64,000 bases of DNA from Podarcis filfolensis (Eukaryota). Location of the stretch: assembly GCA_964270895.1 (NCBI GenBank), contig OZ185436.1. One strand, written 5' to 3'. The notes below the pieces were generated by a model. It saw only the letters and a list, made by a program, of their open reading frames with translations. It made no database searches and was not told the DNA's origin. Both the position numbers and the translations under genes were made by a program. Position 1 is the first letter of the stretch. Every line of letters begins with the position of its first letter. Shown piece by piece: positions 1 to 53,758 of the stretch.

Positions 1-153
1 TCTTCTCTTCTCATGAGGTGGCCAAATTATTGGAGCTTCAGCTTCACGATCTGTCTTTCCAGTGAGCACTCAGGGCTGATTTCCTTCAGAATGGATCAGT
101 TTGATCTTCTTGCAGTCCATGGGACTCTCAAGAGTCTCCTTCAATTCAAAAGC
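1..153 (-). mobile_element. Bov-B (RTE clade LINE) 3' fragment, cut by the window edge
   Basis: The reverse complement matches the Bov-B copies at 43437 and 46884 (gagactcttgagagtcccatggactgcaagaagatcaaac...ggaaatcagccctgagtgctcactggaa). Confidence 0.85.
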
Positions 154-423
154 ACTTTTTGTTTTACTTACATGTAAATGTGCAGAAGCACATTTAAAAA
201 TCTGAACCTCCGCCTGCTTCCTGAAGTGGCTTCCTGAAGTTTATTCTGTCTCCTCAGTATTGCAGCACCTTATTTTACAGTGTGTGGTAGAGGCCAGGGA
301 ATACTGAGAATTGAGGATTTGTGATTTACTGCCACCACCACCACTACCTGAACACATATTACAGCAACGAACAATACATTATCCTTGAGAGAGTCAATGC
401 ACTTCAATACATGAAGTATTAAA

Positions 424-562: not shown

Positions 563-1307
563 CATTGTAGTGATTAATCTTATTGTGGGTAGTGAGGAAT
601 GTTAGCAGCATGCTGGTTTCTAGGAGGCAGCACAAGACTGAATTTTCACAGAGCATAATGCAGATTCACAAGTCAACACATGCTCCTCCAGGAGAAGGTA
701 ACAAATACAAAAAGCCTGCTCAAGGACAGCCTGAGTTGTAAACTGAGAGCTATAAAAAATAATAATATAATGATTGTGGTGGCATGATTATAATTTAGAG
801 GCTAGAGTCACAGGTGAGAAATAGGGTTGAACTGCCTGGCCGAATGTGAAGTAGAGTCAGTAAACAATTGCCAGGCCACTAAATCACTATTCTCCCTATT
901 GCATTTTAGCTTAGAAACATATAATAAACCTATCAAAAAGTCACTTTCCTTTAGAAACTCAGGATATAGCAACCAATCTATTCAATAATACAGTGTTTCC
1001 AGGAAGCTCCCTACAGACTGGATATTTCATTTGATTTTGTTTAAGGGTTTTATGTTTTAGCCATTCCTTAAATATATACCACTAAGATTACAGGCCTCAG
1101 GTAACAACAGCTTCAGGACATAATTCTGGGTGGACACAATATCACTTTTTAACTCCTCTGAGGGTCCGTGCAATGTGATGTCTGAACCAGCAATACTCTG
1201 AACAGATTTAACCTCAAGAACATAAGTAGTACTCCTAGAACCTGGGAGAATCAACAAATTCAAATCCTTACACAGCTATAGATGTACTCAAGCAATGCTC
1301 TGTATTA

Positions 1308-1661
1308 GGTAAAGGTAAAGGGACCCCTGACCATTAGGTCCAGTCGTGGCCGACTCTGGGGTTGTGGCGCTCATCTCGCTTTCTTAGCTGAGGGAGCCGG
1401 CGTACAGCTTCTGGGTCATGTGGCCAGCATGACTAAGCCGCTTCTGGTGAACCAGAGCAGTGCACGGAAACACCGTTTACCTTCCCGCCGGAACGGTACC
1501 TATTTATCTACTTGCACTTTGACATGCTTTTGAACTGCTAGGTTGGCAGGAGCAGGGACCGGGCAACGGGAGCTCACCCCGTCGCGGGGATTCAAACCGC
1601 CGACCTTCTGATCAGCAAGTCCTAGGCTCTGTGGTTTAACCCACAGCGCCACTTGTGTCCC
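1308..1661 (-). mobile_element. Sauria SINE (tRNA-derived head, Bov-B-related tail)
   Basis: On the minus strand: head gggacac..gtggcgctgtggg, B box ggtttgaatcc, (ACCTTT)n tail. 13-bp TSD atgctctgtatta at 1295-1307 and 1662-1674. Confidence 0.95.
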
Positions 1662-1674
1662 ATGCTCTGTATTA

Positions 1675-1765
1675 CTTATCTGTAAAATGGGAATAAAGTT
1701 GTCCTATTTAATAAGGCTGTGGTGGGGATTATAGATGACAAAGGATCCAGTGCATTCATAACTAT
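1675..1765 (+). mobile_element. MIR/CORE-SINE-like remnant, interrupted by the Sauria SINE
   Basis: cttatctgtaaaatgggaataaag...ggctgtggtggggattata resembles the MIR core (ctcatctgtaaaatggggataata...gggttgttgtgaggattaaa), as recalled. Confidence 0.45.
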
Positions 1766-4020: not shown

Positions 4021-4106
4021 TATTAGACCCACATTGCACTCATTTCAATGTCACTGGTGCTTGTGGTGTTGTGTAGCTGTATGAACATTTCGGCTGGCTT
4101 CCCATA

Positions 4107-4434
4107 GGTAAAGGTGAAGGGACCCCTGACCATTAGGTCCAGTCGTGACCGACTCTGGGGTTGCGGCGCTCATCTCACTTTATTGGCCGAGGGAGCTGGG
4201 CATGTGGCCAGCATGACTAAGCCGCTTCTGGTGAACCAGAGAAATGCCGTTTACCTTCCCGCTGGAGCGGTACCTACTTATCTACTTGCACTTGACGTGC
4301 TTTCAAACTGCTAGGTTGGCAGGAACTGGGACCGAGCAACGGGAGCTCACCCCGTTGCGGGGATTCGAACCGGCGACCTTCTGATCGGCAAATCCTAGGC
4401 TCTGTGGTTTAACCCACAGCACCACCCGCGTCCC
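4107..4434 (-). mobile_element. Sauria SINE
   Basis: Near-identical to 1308-1661, with an internal deletion; ggtaaaggtgaagg tail and gggacgcgggtgg head. Confidence 0.93.
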
Positions 4435-5166
4435 ATACTGATCATCCAAATCATGCAGAAACTAAGCACACCAAGGACACCAATCTCTATGGAAGTAGCA
4501 GCACTAAGAAGGGTGTATGTTATCATACTGTCTAATAGACCCATTTGGAACCCAGTTCACATTTTTACTACAGCTTCCAACAGCCCCAATCACTTGGGAG
4601 CAATTTTCAGTAGCAACCCCAGTGCTGGGTTAACTACTGGTATGTGAAGCAGCAGGAACCCATGTGGCAGTACATATGTCAGACTGCAGTTCCCTTCTGG
4701 AATTAAGGGAGTGCCAGGAAGTTCAGTTCCAGCCCAGAACTAGATGAGACCTCTTCAAATGTCATTTTGTTATAAGCGAGAAAGATAGATTGGGGTAGAG
4801 ATTTCACTGGTCAGGCGGAATCAGATTAATGAAAGGAATAATGCAACTCATTTCAGGGGGTTATTGCTACAGGGGTTTGTTTGTTTTGTGTGACAGGTAC
4901 TAAACTATAACTCACATGAGTATACAAACATGGTTCTCCCGTTTAAGTGGCTCGTGAGGACCAGAGGGGAGGAGCTTGAACTGGTGTGGGTCTGTCAGGA
5001 GGTGAAATAAAATGATGCCATTAAGGGCCTTCTGCCTTTTTTACCATTATTTGAGCTAAATAGGATACCCAAATATGTTTAATTTACCTTTAATACAACC
5101 ATACATGTGAAGTGTGACTAGCTGAAGATGTCTGTCCCTCATTCAAATGCTAAATAACCAGCTCAG

Positions 5167-23914: not shown

Positions 23915-24788
23915 CTGTTTATCTATCTACGGTACTCTGGTTTTTTCTGCTGAAAATTTTATTCTATTTTAATAGATAGGAAAATAAACATGGAGGTTTA
24001 TTAGTAAGCAACTTTTGATCATCATAATTTCCTTTTGTTGCATGTGACCACATGTCCTCTCACAGTGGTGACTTTTTGGTTATCTATCTTAGAGAGCACC
24101 AACTTTTATAAATGTCATAGGGTTCTAACTTGGGTGGCAAATACATTTCCAAAATAGGTTGAGCACAACAAAATCCTTCATAGATTAAGAAAGTGCAAAG
24201 GCATATTGTGGGATGCTCCCCTTGTGAAAGAAATACTTCCAGCGTCATATCTAATGTACCATGTCCTCCATCAATGTGATGCCTTTTATTCATCTCCTTA
24301 ATTATACTTTATGAGCCAGTCTATATATTCCTTTTCAGTGTCAAAGAGAGGCCTGAGGGGTGTTTGTTGAAAAATACACCTGTTTAAGGTTTGAAAATAA
24401 CTTACAGATAGTTTATGGGTTAGTCAATAGGCCCATCCCTTCTTTATTGAAAGCTGTTAAAAAGCACGCCACAACATGTTTATTACTGACCTACAGCTTC
24501 TCATTATTGCCCTGCCTTTGTCAATATGAGCATTGATTGTAATTGCAGTTTTGGCCAGCTCAGATTGATTGGAGCATAAAGTAACAAGAATTGTACAATT
24601 ATGTCAAAAGGAGGCTAAAGCTCAATAGCCAAAGCAGATGATGTGCTGATTCAGGCAATGGCCTATTGTCCCACTGGGCTAAAGAAGTAAAGAAAGGGGA
24701 TGGGGGCATCGTCACCATTGATCAGAGTCGTATGCACTGGCATTTATGTTTGTGGTCATTATTTGAAAATAGCAGATTCTTAGTACAG

Positions 24789-25397
24789 TGTGATGGCCTG
24801 GGATTCGGACTCAGAGGCTGAACCTGAGGAATCCCAGCCTGCACAGGAGTCCTCACCTCCAGAACCAGCTGAGCCAGGGCTGGGGCCTGAGCCTGAAGGG
24901 TCCTCACTTGTGCTGGATCCTCAGGTGCAGGCACCAGCTGAGTCTGCTCTGGCCCCTGAGGTGATGGAGGACCCATTGCCTGCAGGTGCTCCACTCTCAG
25001 CCCCGTCAGGGGAAGAGGAGGTTGCCTCTGGGTCCGGTAACCCTCCAGCCTCTCCTGAGCTGCAGAGGCTCAGGGCAGAGAGGCGGAGGGAACTAAGTTC
25101 CCACAGGAGGAGTGCTCGCCTCCAGGCCAGGAGAGGTGAGCCACCTGTGGACCGTGGCCGCCCTATGCCTCGGGACAGATAAAAGCCAGTCAGCCCCAGT
25201 CCCAGGTTGCAGGAGCAACGTTGTTGCTAGCCTGTTCCCGCCTGCACCCTGTCCTGCTCTTCTGCCAGAGTTCCTGACCCCACCCGACTCCTTGCCTTGG
25301 ACCCCGCTACAGCTTTGACAGACAGCCTCCATACTGCACCATCAACCTCGGACTGGACTCGGACCTAGCCTCTCGGTTAGCCCCCAGGACCAGCACA
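24789..25397 (+). mobile_element. Solo LTR, 609 bp, probably Gypsy-type
   Basis: TGTG...CACA termini, 5-bp TSD tacag / tgcag (1 mismatch), TATA-like gataaaag at ~25178, and GC-rich against the AT-rich flanks. Confidence 0.8.
24793..25182 (+). CDS. LTR U3-encoded ORF, 129 aa, acidic/Pro-rich with a C-terminal basic RRSARL segment; expression unknown
   Basis: Uninterrupted ATG...TAA frame occupying the U3-like part of the solo LTR. Confidence 0.3.
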   Translation: MAWDSDSEAEPEESQPAQESSPPEPAEPGLGPEPEGSSLVLDPQVQAPAESALAPEVMEDPLPAGAPLSAPSGEEEVASGSGNPPASPELQRLRAERRRELSSHRRSARLQARRGEPPVDRGRPMPRDR

Positions 25398-25499
25398 TGC
25401 AGTGAGGTAGCCCAGTTTGCTGATGGTTCGGAATTGTTCCAAAGGGATTGCAAGTAACTCTGAAAGAATCTCTCCAAACCGGGCAAATGGGCATTAAAT

Positions 25500-26020
25500 A
25501 AATTTAGTGTGTGCAGGTGTAAAATGGTGCATATTGGGGCAAAAAACAAACAAAACCACATCCCAATTTTACATAAAAACCTAATGTAGTTTGAAATGGT
25601 GGTGACTGACCAGGAACAACCTTGGGGCTTTAGTGAATAGCTCAGGCATAGGCAAACTTGGCCCTCCAGATGTTTGGAACTACAATCCCCATCATCCTTG
25701 ACCTCTGGTCCTGTTAGCTAGGGATGATGGGAGTTGTAGTCACAAAACATCTGGAGGTCTGAGTTTGCCTATGCCTGGAATAGCTTGAATAAAATGTTTG
25801 CCCATTGCATGGCAGATATGGAAAAAGGTGGATTCCATGTTAAAAGGAATAAAGAATGGGATTAAAAATAAAACTGCCAATATTATAATGCCTAGCTACA
25901 TCTATGGTTCAATAACATTGAGAAAATAGCTTTCAAAACTGCACAACAAAAGGATGCTGGAAAAGGTGCAGAAAAGGGTCTTGAGCATCTGCTTTATGAG
26001 GGAAGGTTTTTTAGATTAGG
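25500..26020 (+). mobile_element. Old CR1 fragment interrupted by a hAT MITE
   Basis: gtgactgaccaggaacaaccttgggg...gctggaaaaggtgcagaaaaggg...gagcatctgctttatgagggaagg is decayed CR1 ORF2-like sequence. Confidence 0.55.
25643..25777. mobile_element. hAT-type MITE (caggcatagg family)
   Basis: TIR caggcataggcaaac / gtttgcctatgcctg. Perfect 8-bp TSD gaatagct. Confidence 0.92.
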
Positions 26021-32234: not shown

Positions 32235-32441
32235 AGCAGGATATTACCAGCAAGTCACAATAGGTAGGTGAAGCAGTAGAATAGGATAGGTTGCACAGGC
32301 TACTTTTTTGCAGCCAAAAAAAGATTATCTAAGTTGCCATATATGATCTAAATAAAGTGGGTGTGATTCAGGCCAAGTTAAATATACTCAAGTCCTATTG
32401 ATTTCAATTAGCATGATTTCAGCATGTTTTCTCCCACTAAA

Positions 32442-32809
32442 AAGGTAAAGGTAAAGGTACCTTTGCCCGTACAGGCCAGTCGTGTCCGACTCTAGGGTTG
32501 CGTGCCCATCTCGCTTAAGAGGCCGGGGGCCAGCGCTGTCCGGAGACACTTCCGGGTCATGTGGCCAGCGTGACGAAGCTGCTCTGGCGAGCCAGCACCA
32601 GCGCAGCACACGGAAACACCGTTTACCTTCCCACTAGAAAGCGGTACCTATTTATCTACTTGCACTTAGGGGTGCGTTCGAACTGCTAGGTGGGCAGGAG
32701 CTGGGACCGAAAGATGGGAGCTCACCCTGCCACGGGGATTCGAACCGCCGACCATGCGATCGGCAAGTCCTAGGCACTGCGGTTTTACCCACAGCGCCAC
32801 CCGCGTCCC
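32442..32809 (-). mobile_element. Sauria SINE (different subfamily, CpG-rich, young)
   Basis: (ACCTTT)n tail, gggacgcgggtggcgctgtggg head, B box ggttcgaatcc. Perfect 14-bp TSD tttctcccactaaa at 32428-32441 and 32810-32823. Confidence 0.95.
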
Positions 32810-33635
32810 TTTCTCCCACTAAACCTACGAAATTAAAAGCTGCAATTCCATGCACATTTAAACTGGAGGTAAATCTCACTGAAATCAGTAAATCTTATTC
32901 CAGTTTATTCTGTCTTCGGATCAGATGGGAAATAACGCTCGACTTCAGCAAAAACATGGACAGCTAGTGTGTTTTCATTTTACAGTTCAGTTTGTATAAA
33001 TAGAGGTACCTTCTAAGGCAGCAATGAATGCAGGACATGGCCATATTACAGCCCTTGCCAGCAGCCAACCTAGTTCACAAAAGTAGGTATGATATTCCCT
33101 TAACATCCCACACATTTAAAGTAGGTGTGTTACTGTTCCTAACCTCACCTCCATAGCTTTTCTGCTAGATTAGATGGAAAATCAAGACACAGAAGATTAC
33201 CCTAGTTTTTTTAGTCGTGATGAAATAAATGCATGGATGATTATCTCAAAAATCAGTGGTGTGAAGAAAGTAACATGAAAGGTGTGCCTCAAGGACTGTC
33301 TTTAAAAGCTTTGCCTAGGACCATTTCAGCAAGGTAGTACTTAAGTGTATGGGTCTGGGTGAAAATTTCCTAGCTCAGGTGAGTATCCCTATAATCTTTT
33401 GTGAAAGAGGCTAGTACCCAACAATTCAGCTATGACCTACTGATCTTGTACTTCCATTGTGTGCTTAATTATTTGTGTACTTGACCTTGCAACTGCTTTG
33501 TAGGAATGGCTATCATATCTCCACTATTTCACTGCTGAAAGTACAGATGAAGGTGTTTTGGTTTTAAGACTTTCCCTGAAAAATCAAGGGTGACTTGATC
33601 TCAATTTTTCTGAGTTGTTCTTTCATCATGTAACT

Positions 33636-42631: not shown

Positions 42632-43436
42632 TAAATCATCAGTAGTTTAGCTCTAAAGACTCCCTCTAATATGTCCCCAAAAACCCAGAATCCAGGTCGA
42701 ACTCAGCAGGTTGAAGAGGGCAGGTGCAAAGTTCAGTGATCAACTAACATATGTTGAGTTGAACAGGACAAACTTAATGGGCTACGTTCAGGAAGTCTAG
42801 GAGGAAACAGAAACCCTGGAAAAGAACAGATTTAACACCTACCCAGGCCATATCCCTAGTGCCCTGCTTTGAAGCTTATATTATGTGGGGAACAACTTTG
42901 GGCTGAAGGCACACCTACTACCATACACTTCATCCTGGGCAGCTTTTCCCAGTGATGCAGCTAGGTAATTTTCTACCCTGGACACACCTTAAGACTGTAA
43001 TGTGTACTATTTCACTTCTAAACATGTGGAGCACACATTGAACCCCATTCCACTGCCTCTACCTATGAGCAAACATGGGGTAGCATGATCCTATCCATGC
43101 TTATTTAGGTGTTGAGCACTATTGTGTTCCACAGAGCAGGTACCCCTGCTTTATGCTAGCACTGAACCTGTTCAAGAAGTTTTATATAAAACAGTTCTGC
43201 TTTGTCCTTAAACCCAGGGTCCACTGAAAGTCACCACTCCAGCACCTCACCTACTCAACCTGTCTGGATAGGCCAGAATTCAAATTATTGGTTTGCGGGA
43301 AAGCCTGCTAATCCAAGCAGCTAGTATAGAAATTTCTCAGTTGCCAACTACCTAGTCCTGCGTAGCTCTCCAGGGGACATAGCCCCTTACAACTGACCAC
43401 CCCATGACTGAATAAGCAACCATTATCTATCATCAT

Positions 43437-43936
43437 GAATAATGGTGCTGGAGGAGACTCTTGAGAGTCCAATGGACTGCAAGAAGATCAAACCTCTCCA
43501 TTCTTAAGGAAATCAGCCCTGAGTGCTCACTGGAAGGACAGATCGTGAAGCTGAGGCTCCAATACTTTGGCCACCTCATAAGAAGAGAAGATTCCTTGGA
43601 AAAGACCTTGATGTTGGGAAAGATGGAGGGCACAAGGAGAAGGGGACGACAGAGAATGAGATGGTTGGATAGTGTTCTTGAAGCTACCGGCATGAGTTTG
43701 ACCAAACTGCGGGATGCAGTGGAAGACAGGAGTGCCTGGCGTGCTCTGGTCCATGGGGTCATGAAGAGTCGGACACGACTAAACGACTAAACAACAACAA
43801 ACAAACACCAAATAATGGGTGAAAGGCAGGTTTTATGGGCAAACTCAAAGTTCTGAGTCATAGAAATAAAATCAGGACATTGTTCAATTCATTATCGAAC
43901 ACGAAGAGTCGAACACGACTAAACAACAACACCACA
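43437..43936 (+). mobile_element. Composite Bov-B insertion: Bov-B 3' end + transduced unique flank + second Bov-B tail
   Basis: Bov-B ORF C-terminus (...RSAWRALVHGVMKSRTRLND*). 43801-43896 matches 47411-47506. Extra tail cacgaagagtcgaacacgactaaacaacaac. 12-bp TSD atctatcatcat at 43425-43436 and 43937-43948. Confidence 0.9.
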
Positions 43937-45776
43937 ATCTATCATCATATTAATTACTACACCAAACTTACTGCTTCAAACTCTTTACGATCCCCAATTC
44001 ATTCATTCTTTTTGAAAACCCTTGGCAGATAGGTTACATTTTTTGTATATCCTGACACCCATTTGAGAGATGGACAAAACAAGTGTTAGAGTGAATTGTT
44101 CAAGGATACCCACCAAGCCTTGGCATCGACACTTCCAACACTGACCGTGTCCTTGGCCAGCTTCAAATTAATTGTCTCCTAAGTTCTTTCTTTTCCTGTA
44201 AAAAGTTACACAGGGTTAGCATTCCCCACCCCCATGAAATCAAACTGGAATGAGGATCAGTCAAAACTGCATCAGATACATCACTTATTTCTACATAGCA
44301 AAATAGTAATAGAGGCATTCAAGTGTCTGTGTGGGAGGGGGGAGGATGTGAAAAAAATGGGATGGGAGGGAGGAGAAACAGGATAGAGATTCTGGAACCC
44401 TGAACTCTACCCTGCAACAGTTTGGGAATACTTTGCTGTCTATAATAAAGAATAAATATGGTTTGACACAGGAAATAATGTGATCCCCCTCCTGCCCTGT
44501 GCTGCATAAATTATGGGTAATACATACTGGTTCTCCGTTTAGCCAGAGGTCAGTTATACTGTTATGTTAGTAAATTATTAAAACTAAATGATTGTTGCAA
44601 ATCCTTAAGAGAATTCTGCAGCATATCTATGCTTATTGTAATTAATATTTTAGCACAAGACAATGTCTCTGATGTGGCGTGATTAATATAGAGGCCACAG
44701 TGTATGGAAATGAGTTTGACTTGATATTAAAACCGTGAAGACACAATATCATAGCCAACTGCAGCATCCTATGTTTGTTCTTGTCATCCCTCATGATACA
44801 CATGCAGACAATTGTAAGGAAAAATATATTCTTGGGTGTTGATTTTAGTACACAAACAAACCAGACAAAAGCTTCAGTTTATTTAGAGGGGGGGCGGGGC
44901 GGATTAAAATACAATCTAAGTAAAATGCAAGCAATATATTAACATTCTATGCAAGATTAACTAGAACAGAAGTCCTGTGTGCTCCTGCCAAAATGATGCT
45001 TAAGAAAAGCTATGTCTGAAATCCTAATCACTGTTATTAAGGAGTAAATCCCATTGAACTAAATGGGAATTATTTCTGAATAAGTATGCAGAGGCATGCA
45101 TAGTAAGTAGCCTTTTTTCTATGGGATTTTGCTCTGTAACATCTGTATTTAACACTTATAAAATTTGTTTCTCCTATGCTTCTGTTTTAAGGGACCAGCC
45201 ACTTTGGGGTCCTCCTCTCCTCCAAAAAAAAAACCCCATTGCACAGAAGAAAATGTCTTCTACACAGGGTACAAAAATTGAGCCAAAATGGAGAGATTAA
45301 TGACTGGCAATACTGCTGCACTCCATTCCCTGGGGACTTTGGGGAGTGTTTGAGGCTGCTGGAGTGTAGTACTGCACTTAGAGAAACTTGGATCCTGATT
45401 CTGGCACACTGCCATCCCCATGTCATATCCCATCTTCACCCACAAGTGATTCCTCATAATAAGTTGCACTTATGCAGCTGCAGTATTCTAGCCTGGCCAC
45501 CTAAAAATGTTAAAGAAGTACTATCTTGGGAGTGTACTATAAGATGACAATGCAGCAGCACAGAGAAGTAGGCATGATTTTGTCCAACCAATTATTCCTT
45601 GTTAGAGGGTAGGGCTGGAGTGTTAGGTGCATCAGACAAAACTATTAATGTGCTGTATTTAGTTTCTTTTCAGATATTATTCTAACAGTCAGATCACTAC
45701 ACTGTGTTTAAAATTTATGGTAATCTTGGAAGAGTTTTGGTTCCTCCCCATTCTTCTGCTGATCATCTTTTAAATC

Positions 45777-45998
45777 AGATAGGTAGCCGTGTTGGTCTGC
45801 CATAGTCAAAACAAAAAAAGTTTTTTCCTTCCAGTAGCACCTTAAAAACCAACTAAGTTAGTTCTTGGTATGAGCTTTCGTGTGCATGCACACTTCTTCA
45901 GGTATCTGAAGAAGTGTGCATGCACACGAAAGCTCATACCAAGAACTAACTTAGTTGGTCTTTAAGGTGCTACTGGAAGGAAAAAAAATTTTTTGTTT
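45777..45998. mobile_element. Penelope-like element remnant forming a ~93-bp-arm inverted repeat
   Basis: Arms ~45809-45901 and 45906-45998 are near-perfect reverse complements around a 4-nt loop (gtat). Flanking aggtagccgtgttggtctg is PLE pseudo-LTR-like. Confidence 0.8.
45901..45940 (+). ncRNA. Minimal type I hammerhead ribozyme motif (Penelope-associated)
   Basis: GGUAU-CUGAAGA-A-GUGUGCAUGCACAC-GAAA-GCUC^AUACC: helix I GGUAU/AUACC, core CUGANGA...GAAA, palindromic helix II, palindromic helix III AGCU, CUC cleavage triplet. Confidence 0.7.
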
Positions 45999-46883
45999 CA
46001 TCTTTTAAATCGTTCAACTAATCCTTTTTTAAAAAAATGCAGTTGAATTGTCACTTGCAGAGCCTGAGTGCATTTCTTTAAATAAATAAAACATAGATTA
46101 TTAAGTCTTGCTCCAGTAAGAAATATCAGTGAAAATAGTTCTCAAGATTTTTGTGTTACAGTGTACACTTTTACATGTGTAAATGATCTATCTATCTATC
46201 TATCTATCTGCGTTAGAACTTTGGATATTGTCACTGTTTTTCAGATGTCAGCACAGAATGGAAAGATGAATCTCTGAAAAACCAAAATCCTGCACTGGGA
46301 AGTAAATTAATCTTGCTCCTCTTACAGAAACAGCTTGTTAGTTAGCTGGAACTACATACTGAGTTTTATCAGAAACCTAAGAGTTCAAGCTTAAGATGTG
46401 TTGAAAAGTGTTCTCTGTGTCAGGCATTTATATGTCAGAAACTCAGGTTTTAAACTCTGGGGGAAAGTGAGCATTTATCGTATAGATCAAATAGTATGTG
46501 AGATGCATGGAAGTTCTGTCTTGTCCCACTAGGGAAATGCTGTGTTTATGGACTTACATCTGTATACAGGCATCATTATTTCCTGCATTGTCAGTATGGA
46601 GCACTCTCTCCCCTGTGCCATCCTGGCTTACAAATTAGCACATGCAGCAACAGGTCCTGAGCAGTTAACTACTCCATGGAAATATCTCCCTTCCTCTCAA
46701 CTTAACAGAAAGGAAATAGTTCCACTATGTTTATGTCTGCAAGAAATGAGATGTTATGATTTAAAATGAAAATGAAATGCCTGGACTCTATGAGCCTTTA
46801 TAAATATATCTAAAATAGCAATAAGTGACCAAAAACAAAATTGGACAAACCACTGCAATTAGCTAGCAGCTAATGAACACCAA

Positions 46884-47409
46884 TTAAAAGATGCCTGCTT
46901 CTTGGGAGAAAAGCAATGACAAACCTAGACAGCATCTTAAAAAGCAGAGACATCACCTTGCCAACAAAGGTCCATATAGTTAAAGCTATGGTTTTCCCAG
47001 TAGTGATGTATGGAAGTGAGAGCTGGACCATAAAGAAGGCTGATCGCCGAAGAATTGATGCTTTTGAATTATGGTGCTGGAGGAGACTCTTGAGAGTCCC
47101 ATGGACTGCAAGAAGATCAAACCCATCCATTCTTAAGGAAATCAGCCCTGAGTGCTCACTGGAAGGACAGATCACTTTGGCCACCTCATGAGAAGAGAAG
47201 ACTCCCTGGAAAAGACCCTAATGTTGGGAAAGATGGGGGGCACAAGGAGAAGGGGACGACAGAGAATGAGATGGTTGGATAGTGTTCTCGAATCTACCGG
47301 CATGAGTTTGTCCAAACTGCGGGACGCAGTGGAAGACAGGAGTGCCTGGCGTGCTCTGGTCCATGGGGTCACGAAGAGTCGGACATGACTAAATGACTAA
47401 ACAACAACA
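46884..47409 (+). mobile_element. 5'-truncated Bov-B LINE
   Basis: RT C-terminal ORFs (TNLDSILKSRDITLPTKVHIVKAMVFPVVMYGSESWT...), a (CAA)n tail, 12-bp TSD aa(t/c)gaacaccaa at 46872-46883 and 47410-47421, and a 19-bp internal deletion. Confidence 0.93.
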
Positions 47410-48267
47410 AACGAACACCAAATAATGGGTGAAAGGCAGGCTGTATGGGCAAACTCAAAGTTCTGAGTCATAGAAATAAAATCAGGACATTGTTCAATTC
47501 ATTATCTGATTTGACATATAATATCATAGCATTCCATTTATTTTACCAAAATCCTGGCCTATGGAAAGAGAACCATGCTCATTAGGACTAGATGTTCTGG
47601 AACAGGAGGTCTAGGTTAGGAACAATGTAGCACAGATATTCCAAAACTCTTTGAAGTGAACGAATGGGAAGTCAATGACCCTGGTAGACCACCGCAGTCA
47701 GAAATACAGAAAGTTTCATTTTGTATTGCTGCTAGCTTGCAGAGTACAGGGGAACCCTTTAAGAGAACTTGCTAAATGAAAAAGACCTTTTGCTTGCCTC
47801 TTTTCATTTTCAATATCCTCGCAACATTCTTGCACGCTCTCTTGCCCAGGCAGCTCTTAGGCTGTACAGTATTTAAAAGTCTGTGGACTGGCTCCAGAGA
47901 AACACATGCATGACAGGACTGGTGGAAAATGAGTTCTCTGCCACTGCTTCCACAGTAGTTGCTGATGCCCCATGAAAAGGCTCCAGTAAGGATCAGGAGA
48001 CCCTGCTGAATGGAGATGGGCTCTGGTGCAGGGGGCTTAGATGGAAAGGAAAATCTGGGGGGGGGGTCAACAGCAACCTAAGCCAATTGGCTTTGGCTGG
48101 CTTCCCTAGCCAACAATGCAGTCACTTGGGGGAGGCAAGGAGGGATGGACAGTGATAAAGTTGCTTTCCCTGACATTTTATACATGCATTTCTCCAGATC
48201 CATCCCTATATAACAAACCTTATTGAAAAACATCTTATAGCGTGGTGTCATAGTTGGAATACAACTA

Positions 48268-48996: not shown

Positions 48997-49184
48997 CATA
49001 GCTGTCAACCTTCCCTTTTTTTGCAGGAAATTCCCTTATTCCAGCACTGTTTCCCACTGCTTTCTGCTGCTATCCTGGATTGTTAGATATCCCGTAGACT
49101 GTCCCCAGGACAGGTGAGGCTGCTGATCCCTTATTTTCAAGGCTGCTGATCCCTTATTTTCAAATCTGAAAGTTGACAGCTATG
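48997..49184. mobile_element. hAT-type MITE with internal 23-bp tandem duplication
   Basis: TIR catagctgtcaac / gttgacagctatg, 8-bp TSD gtgtgggg / gtgtgagg, and aggctgctgatcccttattttca repeated twice. Confidence 0.85.
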
Positions 49185-49228
49185 GTGTGAGGATTTTCAC
49201 TTGTGCAACATAAATCCCCCACCCTCTC

Positions 49229-51455
49229 TGAAACGTCCCTCTTTCAATCGGTGTTAAGTTTTTCTCCAAAACCTTAGTTTTTGACTTATTCAATTTAAAT
49301 CCTGCCACTTGACCAAATTCTTGAATTAGTTCTAAAACTCTTTTGGTACTAGATTCTGGCTCCTGTAACGTCAAGACTAGATCATCTGCAAATGCTCTCA
49401 ATTTATACTGTTTGGCTCCGACCTGAATACCTTTAACCAACCGGTCCCTTCTAATCATATTCAGCAAGACCTCCAGGACCGAAATGAAAAGCAGTGGGGA
49501 AATTGGGCATCCCTGTCATGTCTCTTTCTCTATCTTAAATTGTTCTGTAACCACATTATTTACAATTAGTTTAGCCTTTTGTTCAGAATATATTGCACCA
49601 ATACCATTCTCAAAACCTTGGCCTACCCCCATACCCTGTAGGTTCTTTTTCATAAAACTCCAAGAAATATTGTCAAAGGCTTTCTCCGCGTCCACAAATA
49701 TCAGAACTGCTTTAGTGTTTATATTCACTTCTAGTTTTTCCAAAATATCAATTACGTTCCTCAAGTTGTCAGACAAATGTCTTCCCGGGAGAAAGCCCAC
49801 TTGGTCCTTATGAATCTCTTCCATCAGTACTTTTTTCAGTCTCTTAGCCAAGATGTCAGCAAAAATTTTGTAATCCACATTTAGTAAGGATATCGGGCAG
49901 TAGTTCTTAAGTTGAGTCTTTTCAGTTTCCGTTTTCGGTATTAGTGTAATATAGGCCTCTTTCCACGATTCTGGTGCCCTTTTCCCTTCCAAGATCTCAT
50001 TGCAGACTTCCTTCAAAGGTTGTAATAGCCACTCTTTCAAAGATCTATAGTATCTGGAAGTCAGCCCATCCGGTCCTGGAGACTTGCCTAATTGCATATT
50101 TTGAATGGCACCTTCTATCTCCTGGTCTGATATTTTACAGTTCAGCATTATTTTACTTTCTTGTGAGATTTTTTGTAATCCATTTGTTTTCAAAAAACAG
50201 TCAATGCCAATTTCATTCTGTGGCCCTTGTGCATATAGTTGTTTGAAGTACCTCTGGAAGCAGTTTCTAATCTCATTTGGGTTATGTATATCTTTTCCTT
50301 CTACTTCCAAATTTGTGATAGTATTAATTTTTGTCTTTTTTTCAGTTGCCAAGCCAGTAATTTCCCACATTTGTTCGCTGATTCAAATGTCTTCTGTCTC
50401 AATTGTTTAATTTTTCATTCTATTTCCTGGTTCATCAGTTCCATATATTGTACTTGATAAAATTTTATTTCTCTCAAAATCTCCTGCGACTTTGGCTTTG
50501 CCCTCAATTTTTTCTCTCCTTCTTTTATTTTCTCCAAAATTTTATCTTTTTTCTCATTTCGACTTCTCTTCTTTATTGCATTCTGTTGTATCAAAAACCC
50601 TCTCATTACGGCTTTACTTGCGTCCCAGATTACTCTTTTTTCAACCTTTGTTGACATATTTATCTCAAAATAGTCTTTCAGAGTTTTTGGGCCTTCCTGT
50701 GTACTTCTTCATCTCTAAATAGGGCATCATTCATCCTCCATCTAAAGGTACCGGTTGTTATTTGCTTCATCTCCATCTTTACAGCATTATGGTCAGAGCA
50801 AGTTTTAGGGCAGATTTCCACTTTTTTTATCTTTGGTGCCATTCCTCTAGTAATCCAAATTTGGTCAATTCTAGTCCATGTCATCTTAGCTTCAGAGAAG
50901 AAGGTTCCCTCTCTCTCCAGAGGGTTCTTAGTTCTCCAAATGTCAATCAAGTCCATGTTGTCAGTCTTTTCAAAGACTACCATCTTTAGTGACTACCTGT
51001 TTTTGTGCCTTATCCATATTTGTAGATACAACTCCATTCATGTCCCCCATCAAAATTATATTATAGTCCATATAGTCCAAAAGTACCTCATGCAACTTCT
51101 TAAAAAGTTCAGCTTTCCCCTCATTTGGTGCATACACCTCTAAAGTCAAAAGTTTCTCTCCTTGAAATTGAATTTCAACAGCCAAGTATCTTCCTTGTTC
51201 ATCTTTAAAAATTAATTTTGGTGAAAGTTTCTCTTTTACATATATCACCACTCCTCTCTTTTTGACCTTGTCAGACGAAATAAATTCTTGTCCCAATCTC
51301 TTATTGATAAGTATTTTCCTGTGTAGCCTCATTACATGTGTTTCCTGAAGACAAATCAAGTCCAATTGTTCTTTTCTTAATATATGAAAAACACCTTTTC
51401 TCTTTCGAGGGGAGTTAAGTCCATTACAATTCCAACTTAGAAGTTGCAAAGCCAT
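49229..51455 (-). pseudogene. L1 ORF2p (APE endonuclease + reverse transcriptase), disrupted and truncated
   Basis: Motifs SWNCNGL, CLQETH, MGDMN, SDHNAV, KSPGPDG, PISLLNVDYKI, DAEKAFD, QGCPISPLLF, FADD. At least 3 frameshifts (~50975, ~50670, ~50325) and 2 in-frame TGA (50415, 49516). Confidence 0.92.
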
Positions 51456-51461
51456 GATGAA

Positions 51462-52565
51462 TTATTTGATTTTCCCTCCGACTGCACCGAGTTGTTGTTC
51501 TTCTTCTGTCGGTGGTGTGTCTTTCCCTAGGCCAGGAAGTCCATATGATAGATTTGCAATCTCTGAAATTCCTAGTCCTGGTACAGTTGGCTCCTCTCCA
51601 GAATCCACTTCCTTCTGTAAGTCCTCCTCGTGGTCTTTCAGAAAGTTGTCTTTATCATTTACTGTTCTTATTCTTATTTTTCTTCCTTTATACTTGAAAG
51701 ATAGACCTTGGGGAAATTCCCACCTGAAAAGTATCTTGTTCCTTCTCAGTAAAACAACGAGATCTCTGTAATAGGCCCTTACGTCCAGAATGTATTTAGG
51801 TATGTCCTTAAAGATCTCCACAGATGAATCTCCAATTTCCAGAGTTTTTTGATAGTGCAAATTCAAAATTTTGTCTCTTTCCTCTTTTGTTCTTAAAGTA
51901 ATCAAACAGTCTCTTGCCTTATTCCTTCTTTGTCTTCTACCAAGCCTAAATGCACTCAGTATCTTAAATTCATCCTTCCCCAGGTCCTGTTGCCAAAAGT
52001 CTGTAAATTCCTTTGTAAGGAAGTCTGCCAAATTATCTTTCTCACTTTCAGGTATTGCTCTGAGTCTCAAATTCCTCTCTTTTCCTTGTAATTCAATCAT
52101 GGACAGTGTCAAGTCATGTTCCTCAAGTTTCTTATATACTGGTGGTATCTTTTCTTGAACAACAGTTGCAATTTCCTTAGCCTCCTCCGCTAATTTCCTA
52201 GTCGAGGCCAACTCCTCCAATAACTTTTCTATAGACTGAGTATTTGAATTCACCTTCTTTCCCAGCTCATTAATACTTGTAGTGTTCAAGTCTATTTTTG
52301 CTGAGGCCTCGGCTACTTGTTTATTTGTCTCTGCAACCTGTTTATTAGTCTCTGCCACCTGTTTAGCTAAATTCTCCAAAGATGCATTTACTTTGCCAAG
52401 TGCCTGGGCCAACAAGTCTTCAGATGTCATAGCTTTTGACTTAACTTGTAAAGCAGCTGCACCTGCTGTGCCTGCTGCACCGGATGTTGAGGCCCTTCTC
52501 TGTTGTGGAATATCTGTCTTGTATTGTCTCCCAGACCTGGTAGTCTTTTCCTGTCCATCCGCCAT
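51462..52565 (-). CDS. L1 ORF1p (367 aa; coiled coil + RRM + CTD RNA-binding chaperone), frame intact
   Basis: ATG at 52565, heptad coiled coil (ENLAKQVAETNKQVAETNKQVAEAS), RRM start KERNLRLRAIPE, and a C-terminal region FRWEFPQGLSFKYKG. Confidence 0.88.
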   Translation of the reverse strand: MADGQEKTTRSGRQYKTDIPQQRRASTSGAAGTAGAAALQVKSKAMTSEDLLAQALGKVNASLENLAKQVAETNKQVAETNKQVAEASAKIDLNTTSINELGKKVNSNTQSIEKLLEELASTRKLAEEAKEIATVVQEKIPPVYKKLEEHDLTLSMIELQGKERNLRLRAIPESEKDNLADFLTKEFTDFWQQDLGKDEFKILSAFRLGRRQRRNKARDCLITLRTKEERDKILNLHYQKTLEIGDSSVEIFKDIPKYILDVRAYYRDLVVLLRRNKILFRWEFPQGLSFKYKGRKIRIRTVNDKDNFLKDHEEDLQKEVDSGEEPTVPGLGISEIANLSYGLPGLGKDTPPTEEEQQLGAVGGKIK

Positions 52566-53758
52566 AACACTCTCATGCACAGCCCAAGGTCAATCCCACG
52601 CCTGGGGAAATTTGTTTTCAAAAGGAATTTTCCACAGCTTGGTTACTTATTGGCTTAGTTGTTATTGCAACAAAGTCTCCTCTAGGGGGACACACTTCCA
52701 ACTTCACTTTGTAACTTCACTTTGTAACTTTTCAAACAAATAATCCTTATAAGTCTCTAATATCTCTTAAAAGTCACTCTTTCAATGTCCTTAAACAGTT
52801 ACTTTCAACAATAATTGTATCTTTCTTTCAGAGTTAAATAAAAAAAAATTACCCTTAAGGTGTTGACAGTTCATCAGCTTCCCTGTCGTGGGCAGTCCGT
52901 TTCCAGGTTTTAGAAGCAGCAGATAAACCTTTTCACCCTTTTTTTCCTCCTTGCAGGAATAAATCTTGCTCAATTTCACCCCTCTGTCCCTGCCAACAGA
53001 AGGGGGATCACCCTTTTGGTGCTGGATTTTAAATCTTTAATAACCTCTTCCCAAGTTGTAGCTTTAAAGTCTCTTTGCTTTGATCTATTTACAAGAACGG
53101 AAAGGCAGACTTCCTGTTTGTACCTTTCCCGTTTCGGCCGAATTTGTCTTAAATTTCCTCCAAATATTTACTTGATCCTACTCACGGGTAGTTGTTTTAG
53201 CATCCAATTGTCCAGAAAGGAATCAACGCTCCCCGGCTATGGCTTGCGGCTTCACTCCGTGAAGAGGGTAGACGGCTCTCAGCTCCGCACCACACACCCC
53301 CTTTCCGCTCCGGAGCCTTTAAAAAGGCTCTTTCGCGGTGGAGGGGGGCACAAATGGAGCCCCCTGAGCCTCCAAGCTCACAGGCTTCACCGCCTGTGAT
53401 TTCTTCGGGTCTCCGCTTCGCCGCAGCGGTCAGACCCTCTCTTCACCAAGCCGATTCCCTCCGGAACTCGGAGGGAATCCGCCATTAATTCCGCTGGCGC
53501 TGACCGGAAGTCCACCCTCTCCTCTCTCCATGTGCCTATCACAAACATACCCTGGATGGTTGCTGGGGTCAGGCAGATTTATGGGGGCTGCAGGGGAAGA
53601 GGAGAGGAAGAAGTTGTGTTGTGCAGCCAAAAGTGCTTGTGCTGGAGGAAGAACTTCATTGGATACCATCCCTCCAAAAATCTATTCTTTCTACAAAACA
53701 ATATTTATCATTGGTGTGCAACGAAATCTTTTGCTTCCCAAACACCCAAAATGAAATA

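What the first reader, a model, noticed from the sequence alone, without database searches (positions are those of the whole stretch)
43425..47506. Bov-B 3' transduction capped by a second Bov-B tail, landing 3.6 kb from its source
Seen in sequence: the copy at 46884-47409 has its own TSD (aa[t/c]gaacaccaa), so what follows it is genuine genomic flank. The copy at 43437 reproduces that Bov-B end, that TSD and 96 nt of flank (3 mismatches). It stops 26 nt after an AATAAA (43865-43870), then carries a separate ~34-nt Bov-B terminus (cacgaagagtcgaacacgactaaacaacaac). The whole 500-bp unit lies inside a new 12-bp TSD (atctatcatcat). Established: RTE/Bov-B reverse transcriptase recognises its specific 3' tail, so flank transduction is not expected the way it is for poly(A)-primed L1, and Pol II cleavage occurs ~10-30 nt after AATAAA. 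Inference: an RT primed on a Bov-B tail, then jumped onto the processed 3' end of a local read-through RNA from a promoterless copy. That would let a stringent LINE capture and duplicate host sequence.
Basis: partly seen in the sequence, partly recalled or inferred. Interest (0 to 1): 0.78.

Follow-up and report, generated by a model that had tools for sequence, protein, structure and literature searches.

The report
Bov-B copy carrying its neighbour's flank
A 500-base insertion in a lacertid lizard genome is made of the end of a nearby Bov-B jumping gene plus 97 bases of that copy's own flank, capped by a second, separate Bov-B tail; it is a real, single-copy oddity, but whether it arose by a reverse transcriptase switching RNA templates or by DNA repair between two neighbouring copies cannot yet be told.

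Summary
Copy A (43437-43936) holds a 5'-truncated Bov-B body, the 3' target-site duplication (TSD) and 97 nt of flank of copy B (46883-47410, 3.6 kb downstream; 3 mismatches), 3 filler bases and a separate 37-nt Bov-B tail, all inside a perfect 12-bp TSD. Contigs of three related species hold both junctions of A and of B. Hundreds of family contigs diverge exactly at the Bov-B ends, and the flank lies at single-contig depth, so it is unique DNA and not part of a subfamily consensus. A came from the B locus.

The mechanism is not settled. I slightly favour one target-primed insertion that started on a Bov-B tail and then switched to a local template carrying B and its flank, an L1/U6-type chimera made by an RTE-clade enzyme. 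An almost equally good rival is DNA-level repair of an older ordinary Bov-B insertion that copied from B into its flank and was then end-joined.

AATAAA at that distance has about a 2.4% chance expectation, but the junction carries no A-run. Rare variants shared by A and B exist only in 43655-43715. A mosaic test was not significant, and no informative ortholog could be fetched.

This is a new variant of a known kind, of moderate interest.

The parts
43425..43436 (+). 5' copy of the TSD of unit A (atctatcatcat)
   Evidence: a perfect 12-bp match to 43937-43948
43437..43799 (+). 5'-truncated Bov-B body and first tail of A; the open C-terminal ORF2 fragment is 43443-43787
   Evidence: (87-90% to Podarcis lilfordi Bov-B ORF2 fragments); family contigs diverge after 43799/43800
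43800..43896 (+). copy of B's 3' TSD (43800-43811) and of B's unique flank; AATAAA at 43865-43870
   Evidence: 94/97 to 47410-47506; single-copy depth; 121-nt contig in organism C
43897..43899 (+). 3 filler bases (gaa) at the junction; no A-run
43900..43936 (+). second, separate Bov-B LINE-type tail with a 5-bp hairpin AGUCG-AACA-CGACU
   Evidence: it differs from the Sauria SINE termini in the window
43937..43948 (+). 3' copy of the TSD of unit A
46872..46883 (+). 5' TSD of source copy B (aatgaacaccaa)
   Evidence: contigs diverge before 46882
46883..47410 (+). source copy B: a 5'-truncated Bov-B with a 19-nt deletion after 47172
47411..47506 (+). B's 3' TSD and the unique flank that A reproduces; homology ends at 47506

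Best explanation
I read this as one target-primed reverse transcription event by the Bov-B (RTE-clade) machinery at 43936/43937. Synthesis began, as the enzyme requires, on the 3' tail of a Bov-B LINE RNA and copied about 37 nt including the hairpin. It then added about 3 untemplated bases and switched to a second template from the immediate neighbourhood, most likely a + strand transcript running through the promoterless copy B and 97 nt of its flank. It copied 460 nt of that template before stopping. The product is a chimeric retrocopy inside one 12-bp TSD, an RTE-clade counterpart of L1/U6 chimeras and of the step thought to create SINEs. What is shown: the structure, the B-to-A direction, the uniqueness of the flank, and the age (shared by three species; 4.5% A-B divergence). 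What is inferred: that the second template was RNA, that it was local or nascent, and that its end relates to the AATAAA.
For: One perfect TSD encloses the whole unit, with a LINE-type tail abutting the 3' TSD. A carries B's TSD and flank, so it comes from the B locus. The flank is single-copy and the Bov-B ends are exact. A-B divergence is similar in the body (17/344) and the flank (3/97). The change-point test is not significant after correction (p=0.26). A and B share rare variants (43655, 43670, 43689-90, and 43715/47325, where 98% of family contig depth has G). No + strand Bov-B tail lies downstream of B, which excludes simple read-through into a second tail. AATAAA lies 26 nt before the junction, against a 2.4% chance rate. 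Template switching by LINE reverse transcriptases, and RTE chimeras that give rise to SINEs, are on record (10.1101/2025.02.02.635956; 10.1101/2022.11.04.512097; PMC3747384).
Against: Landing 3.6 kb from the source is not expected for a diffusible RNA (roughly 4e-6 in a genome of about 2 Gb, a size I assume) and needs a nascent or tethered transcript. There is no A-run at the junction, so the template was not a mature polyadenylated RNA. No evidence of + strand transcription was obtained, and the gene context is unknown. All rare variants shared by A and B lie in 43655-43715, with none in the 5' 218 nt. All 10 differences in 43437-43627 are non-CpG, against 4 of 10 further on (nominal p=0.025). 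Both patterns fit a mosaic origin.
Confidence: 0.45

Rival explanations
1. Two steps at the DNA level. An ordinary 5'-truncated Bov-B (A0) inserted at 43437 with its own tail (the present 'second tail') and TSD. Later a break or a stalled fork near A0's tail was repaired by one-sided homologous invasion of the neighbouring copy B. Synthesis ran through B's tail, TSD and 97 nt of flank, and the end was joined to the remaining 37 nt of A0 with 3 filler bases. This is SDSA or template switching finished by end joining.
For: It explains the 3.6-kb proximity without needing any RNA. Shared rare variants occur only in 43655-43715, next to the copied part. Non-CpG differences are concentrated in 43437-43627 (10/171 against 4/247, nominal p=0.025). 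There are 7 A-private non-CpG changes in the 5' part against 0 in the 3' body. The second tail is of a different type from B's. Ectopic repair between dispersed repeats, and copying of non-homologous sequence from ectopic sites, are known (PMC7407515; reference lists of PMC4888836 and PMC7407515: Nassif 1994, Belmaaza and Chartrand 1994, Tremblay 2000; these were not read here).
Against: The change-point signal disappears after correction (p=0.26). It needs two events and a break placed in the last ~40-100 nt of A0. Synthesis must also have bypassed annealing at the tail homology. The AATAAA spacing would be coincidence (2.4%). No pre-conversion allele was seen in three species.
Confidence: 0.37
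2. The same single insertion event, but after the 37-nt tail the polymerase switched to single-stranded DNA of the B locus (R-loop or replication intermediate) rather than to RNA.
For: It explains the proximity and the lack of an A-run. The structure is identical to that of the best explanation.
Against: There is no homology or microhomology between the tail and 47500-47506 to guide the switch. No precedent was checked here.
Confidence: 0.1
3. Ordinary retrotransposition of a read-through RNA from an unseen paralogue or lost allele of the B locus that had a short Bov-B tail right after the flank. Alternatively, A is one member of a multicopy composite family.
For: It needs no template switch.
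Against: The flank lies at the depth of one contig per copy in three species. No + strand tail lies downstream of B in the window. B's flank runs on into unique DNA.
Confidence: 0.05

Closest known systems
L1 chimeric retrocopies (U6/L1, mRNA/L1) made by template switching during target-primed reverse transcription
   Same: The 3' part is a 5'-truncated LINE end and the 5' part comes from another template. Both parts have the same orientation, one TSD encloses both, and there is no TSD between them (10.1101/2025.02.02.635956).
   Different: The enzyme is RTE/Bov-B, not L1. There is no poly(A). The LINE part is only 37 nt. The partner is another Bov-B copy with its flank from 3.6 kb away, not an abundant small RNA.
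L1 3' transduction
   Same: Flanking DNA downstream of a source element is duplicated along with the element's end.
   Different: There is no poly(A) tail after the passenger. The passenger is capped by a specific LINE tail. The source is a promoterless fragment, and the copy landed next to its source.
Birth of RTE/Bov-B-tailed SINEs (Sauria SINE, Bov-tA, Ped-1/2)
   Same: Foreign sequence is joined upstream of a short Bov-B 3' tail that carries the recognition hairpin (PMC3747384).
   Different: It has no Pol III promoter, is single-copy and shows no sign of amplification. The Sauria SINEs in this window end differently.
Ectopic gene conversion or one-sided invasion repair between dispersed repeats
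   Same: Nearby repeats in the same orientation, a copied tract running out of homology into the donor's flank, and a filler bases junction.
   Different: The tract boundary is not demonstrable statistically, and the ends coincide exactly with a retrotransposon TSD and tail.

Membership tests
Bov-B (RTE clade) LINE insertion | Homology to the Bov-B ORF2 C-terminus and 3' tail | tested here: met
   (87-90% to Podarcis lilfordi proteins, one of them named reverse transcriptase domain-containing). (87-93% DNA identity to 5 lacertid copies). (tens of thousands of family contigs).
Bov-B (RTE clade) LINE insertion | A specific tail at the 3' end abutting a TSD of about 12 bp, with no poly(A) | tested here: met
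   The tail hairpin is kept.
Template-switch chimeric retrocopy | Two parts of different origin, in the same orientation, inside one TSD, with a LINE 3' end as the 3' part | tested here: met
Template-switch chimeric retrocopy | The second template was RNA | not testable with these tools
   No intron loss or poly(A) is available to mark RNA. No RNA reads were laid on the locus, because the single read-laying run was used on DNA contigs.
L1-type 3' transduction | The passenger is followed by poly(A) at a downstream polyadenylation site | tested here: not met
   The junction reads cattatc-gaa-cacgaag with no A-run.
SINE or composite non-autonomous family | Many copies of the same unit | tested here: not met
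   Single-contig depth over 47428-47591, and a 121-nt A contig at single-copy depth.
Ectopic gene conversion tract | A mosaic: the part outside the tract is unrelated to the donor beyond family level | tested here: inconclusive
   Nominal p=0.025, corrected p=0.26. Shared rare variants lie only in 43655-43715.

The most novel reading that the evidence does not exclude
A stringent, tail-specific RTE-clade reverse transcriptase switched from its own tail to a nascent local transcript. It thereby duplicated host flank a few kb away. This would be a direct snapshot of how such LINEs capture host sequence and found new SINE-like elements, and it would show a cis preference for chromatin-tethered RNA.
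Probability: 0.4. Interest if true: 0.6.

Novelty: new variant of a known kind. Interest (0 to 1): 0.45.

Why it matters
Tail-specific LINEs (RTE, CR1, L2) are held to make few retrocopies and no 3' transductions, because priming needs their own tail. A clean single-TSD chimera would show that a Bov-B enzyme can still move host sequence by template switching. That is the step assumed, but rarely caught, in SINE origin. If the case is instead DNA repair, it is a tidy example of repeat-guided repair copying a donor's flank, and a warning that such structures can mimic retrotransposition.

Tried and rejected
- **Multicopy flank or subfamily consensus:** rejected by contig depth and loose ends.
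- **Read-through into a downstream + strand tail:** none is present in the window. The three other hairpin hits are minus-strand Sauria SINEs.
- **Splicing at the junctions:** I read no GT at 47507 and no AG before 47065.
- **Assembly artefact:** rejected, because the junctions are present in contigs of three species.
- **Family consensus from read laying:** only two high-copy rows were printed (43608 and 47325), so I fetched 5 lacertid copies instead. P0004 was not on record.
- **Ortholog hunt through neighbouring ORFs:** 45239-45547 gave one 1.1-kb contig (L006), which does not reach A or B. 44322-44507 gave nothing.
- **Gene context:** the long-ORF list and one atlas search of 24790-25179 were uninformative.
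- **Earlier notes of this scan:** none near this place.
- **Literature:** searches for Bov-B/RTE transduction found no direct precedent. Tremblay 2000 is not held.
Full report
**What is there.**

Unit A spans 43437-43936, exactly 500 nt. Its parts are:
- a 5'-truncated Bov-B body with its tail (43437-43799), holding an open 115-codon ORF2 C-terminal fragment;
- aacaaacaccaa (43800-43811) followed by 85 further bases. Together these match 47410-47506, directly downstream of copy B, at 94 of 97 positions;
- three bases, gaa;
- a separate 37-nt Bov-B terminus (43900-43936).

The whole unit is flanked by a perfect 12-bp direct repeat, atctatcatcat.

Copy B (46883-47410) has its own TSD: aatgaacaccaa upstream and aacgaacaccaa downstream. 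A therefore carries the downstream TSD copy of B. B also extends 182 nt further 5' than A, and its flank runs on into unique DNA. So the direction of copying is B locus to A.

B has a 19-nt deletion that A and a third copy (C, 1-154, minus strand) lack. That deletion arose after the copying.

**Independent support from other genomes.** The stretch is held by runs of three coded organisms, at 31-mer shares of 0.84-0.90, 0.67 and 0.63. I laid Logan contigs of one run of each on 43000-47900.
- All three have contigs crossing A's 5' junction and contigs starting in the second tail and running on to B's 5' junction. A and B are therefore fixed and older than the split of these species.
- 216-295 contigs per run leave the reference right after 43800 and 160-169 after 47410. 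This marks the true 3' end of the family.
- 62-82 contigs per run leave before 46882, and their consensus continues as Bov-B. This marks B's truncation point beside its TSD.
- The bin 47428-47591 has exactly the depth of one contig. In organism C, a 121-nt contig with A-specific letters covers 43776-43896 at single-copy depth.

The flank is therefore unique DNA present twice, not part of a subfamily consensus.

**Family.** The ORF fragment is 87-90% identical to Podarcis lilfordi proteins, so this is a lacertid Bov-B. Ruminant-type Bov-B copies score lower.

The second tail has one gactaaac unit, whereas the first tail of A and the tail of B have two. It keeps the 5-bp hairpin AGUCG-AACA-CGACU.

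Three other hairpin matches in the window are minus-strand Sauria SINEs. They end in a different sequence, so the cap is of LINE type. No + strand tail lies downstream of B in the window.

**Shared derived bases.** I fetched five lacertid copies, L001-L005, and aligned them.
- A and B share letters that are rare or absent in the five copies at 43655 (A; G in all five), 43670 (T; shared by L004) and 43689-90 (GG).
- At 43715/47325, A has T, B has C and all five copies have G. In the contigs, about 98% of family depth has G at 47325.
- Among those of the 120 listed proteins that hold the motif, none has the resulting Gly or Asp.
- All of these sites lie in a 61-nt stretch that is the most variable part of the protein alignment. 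None lies in the 5' 218 nt.

The test is therefore met only for the 3' part of the body.

**Is A a mosaic?** A and B differ at 20 of 441 aligned sites (4.5%).
- The ten differences in 43437-43627 are all non-CpG.
- Of the ten further on, six are CpG transitions.
- Non-CpG differences number 10/171 against 4/247, a nominal p of 0.025. Allowing for the free choice of the change point, p is 0.26.
- Polarised with the five copies, A has 7 private non-CpG changes in the 5' part and none in the 3' body.

This is a hint, not a demonstration, that the 5' part of A has a separate history.

**Mechanism.** Plain read-through transduction does not fit. The passenger is followed by a specific LINE tail and not by poly(A), and no downstream tail exists at the source. 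Two explanations remain.

1. *One insertion event with a template switch.* Priming occurred on a Bov-B tail and 37 nt were copied. A few untemplated bases were added, and synthesis then switched to a template carrying B and its flank. Template switching by LINE enzymes and RTE chimeras that seed SINEs are described (10.1101/2025.02.02.635956; 10.1101/2022.11.04.512097; PMC3747384).
2. *Two events.* An ordinary Bov-B insertion with its own tail was later repaired from the neighbouring copy B by one-sided homologous invasion that ran into B's flank and was end-joined. This type of repair is reviewed in PMC7407515 and cited in PMC4888836. The primary papers were not read here, and PMC85044 is not held.

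The 3.6-kb distance needs a local template in either model. For a freely diffusing RNA the chance is of the order of 4e-6, assuming a genome of about 2 Gb. The RNA model therefore needs a nascent or tethered transcript.

AATAAA within 10-30 nt upstream of a random position occurs at 2.4% of positions in this window, which mildly favours an RNA 3' end. The absence of any A-run at the junction argues against a mature polyadenylated RNA.

My estimates are RNA switch 0.45, DNA repair 0.37, switch to DNA 0.10, and unseen paralogue or family 0.05.

**What could not be done.** An ortholog from a more distant relative was sought through neighbouring ORFs. One 1.1-kb contig was found (L006, about 3.3% substitutions), and it does not reach A or B. 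The second try was blank. Gene context and strand of transcription remain unknown.

**Verdict.** The structure is real and rare, and its derivation from the neighbouring copy is secure. The proposed RNA jump is plausible but unproven, and the poly(A) detail is weak. It is a new variant of known kinds (LINE chimeras, or repeat-guided repair), of moderate interest.

Noticed in passing
window 45763-46011: A 221-bp high-copy element (45777-45997) has a 93-nt near-perfect inverted repeat (45809-45901 / 45906-45998) and a perfect 14-bp TSD, tcatcttttaaatc. It is absent from contigs of another run of the same organism label, from two related species and from L006. Their contigs run straight from 45762/45776 to 45998. 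This looks like a very recent or polymorphic hairpin-shaped insertion.
   Followed up: partly
window 1270-1680, 4070-4480 and 32400-32810 (minus strand): Three Sauria-type SINEs share only the hairpin agagtcgg.cacgact with Bov-B. They end in ...ctggacctaatggtcaggggtccctttaccttta rather than in the LINE's aaacaacaaca terminus. The one at 32475 has the TSD ttagtgggagaaa.
   Followed up: partly
window 49180-52580 (minus strand): A largely open L1-like element: a 372-aa ORF1-like frame, a 161-aa endonuclease frame and a 284-aa reverse-transcriptase frame, broken by a few frameshifts.
   Followed up: no
window 24500-25500: A GC-rich patch (0.50-0.59, against a window mean of 0.41) holds a 130-aa acidic and proline-rich ORF on the + strand (24790-25182). 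It could be a first exon or CpG island. The atlas search gave nothing usable.
   Followed up: partly
window 43592-43608: Three C-to-T changes private to A lie within 17 nt (43592, 43596 and 43608), with a G-to-A at 43580. For 43608, about 98% of family contig depth has C. The cause of the clustering is unexplained.
   Followed up: no
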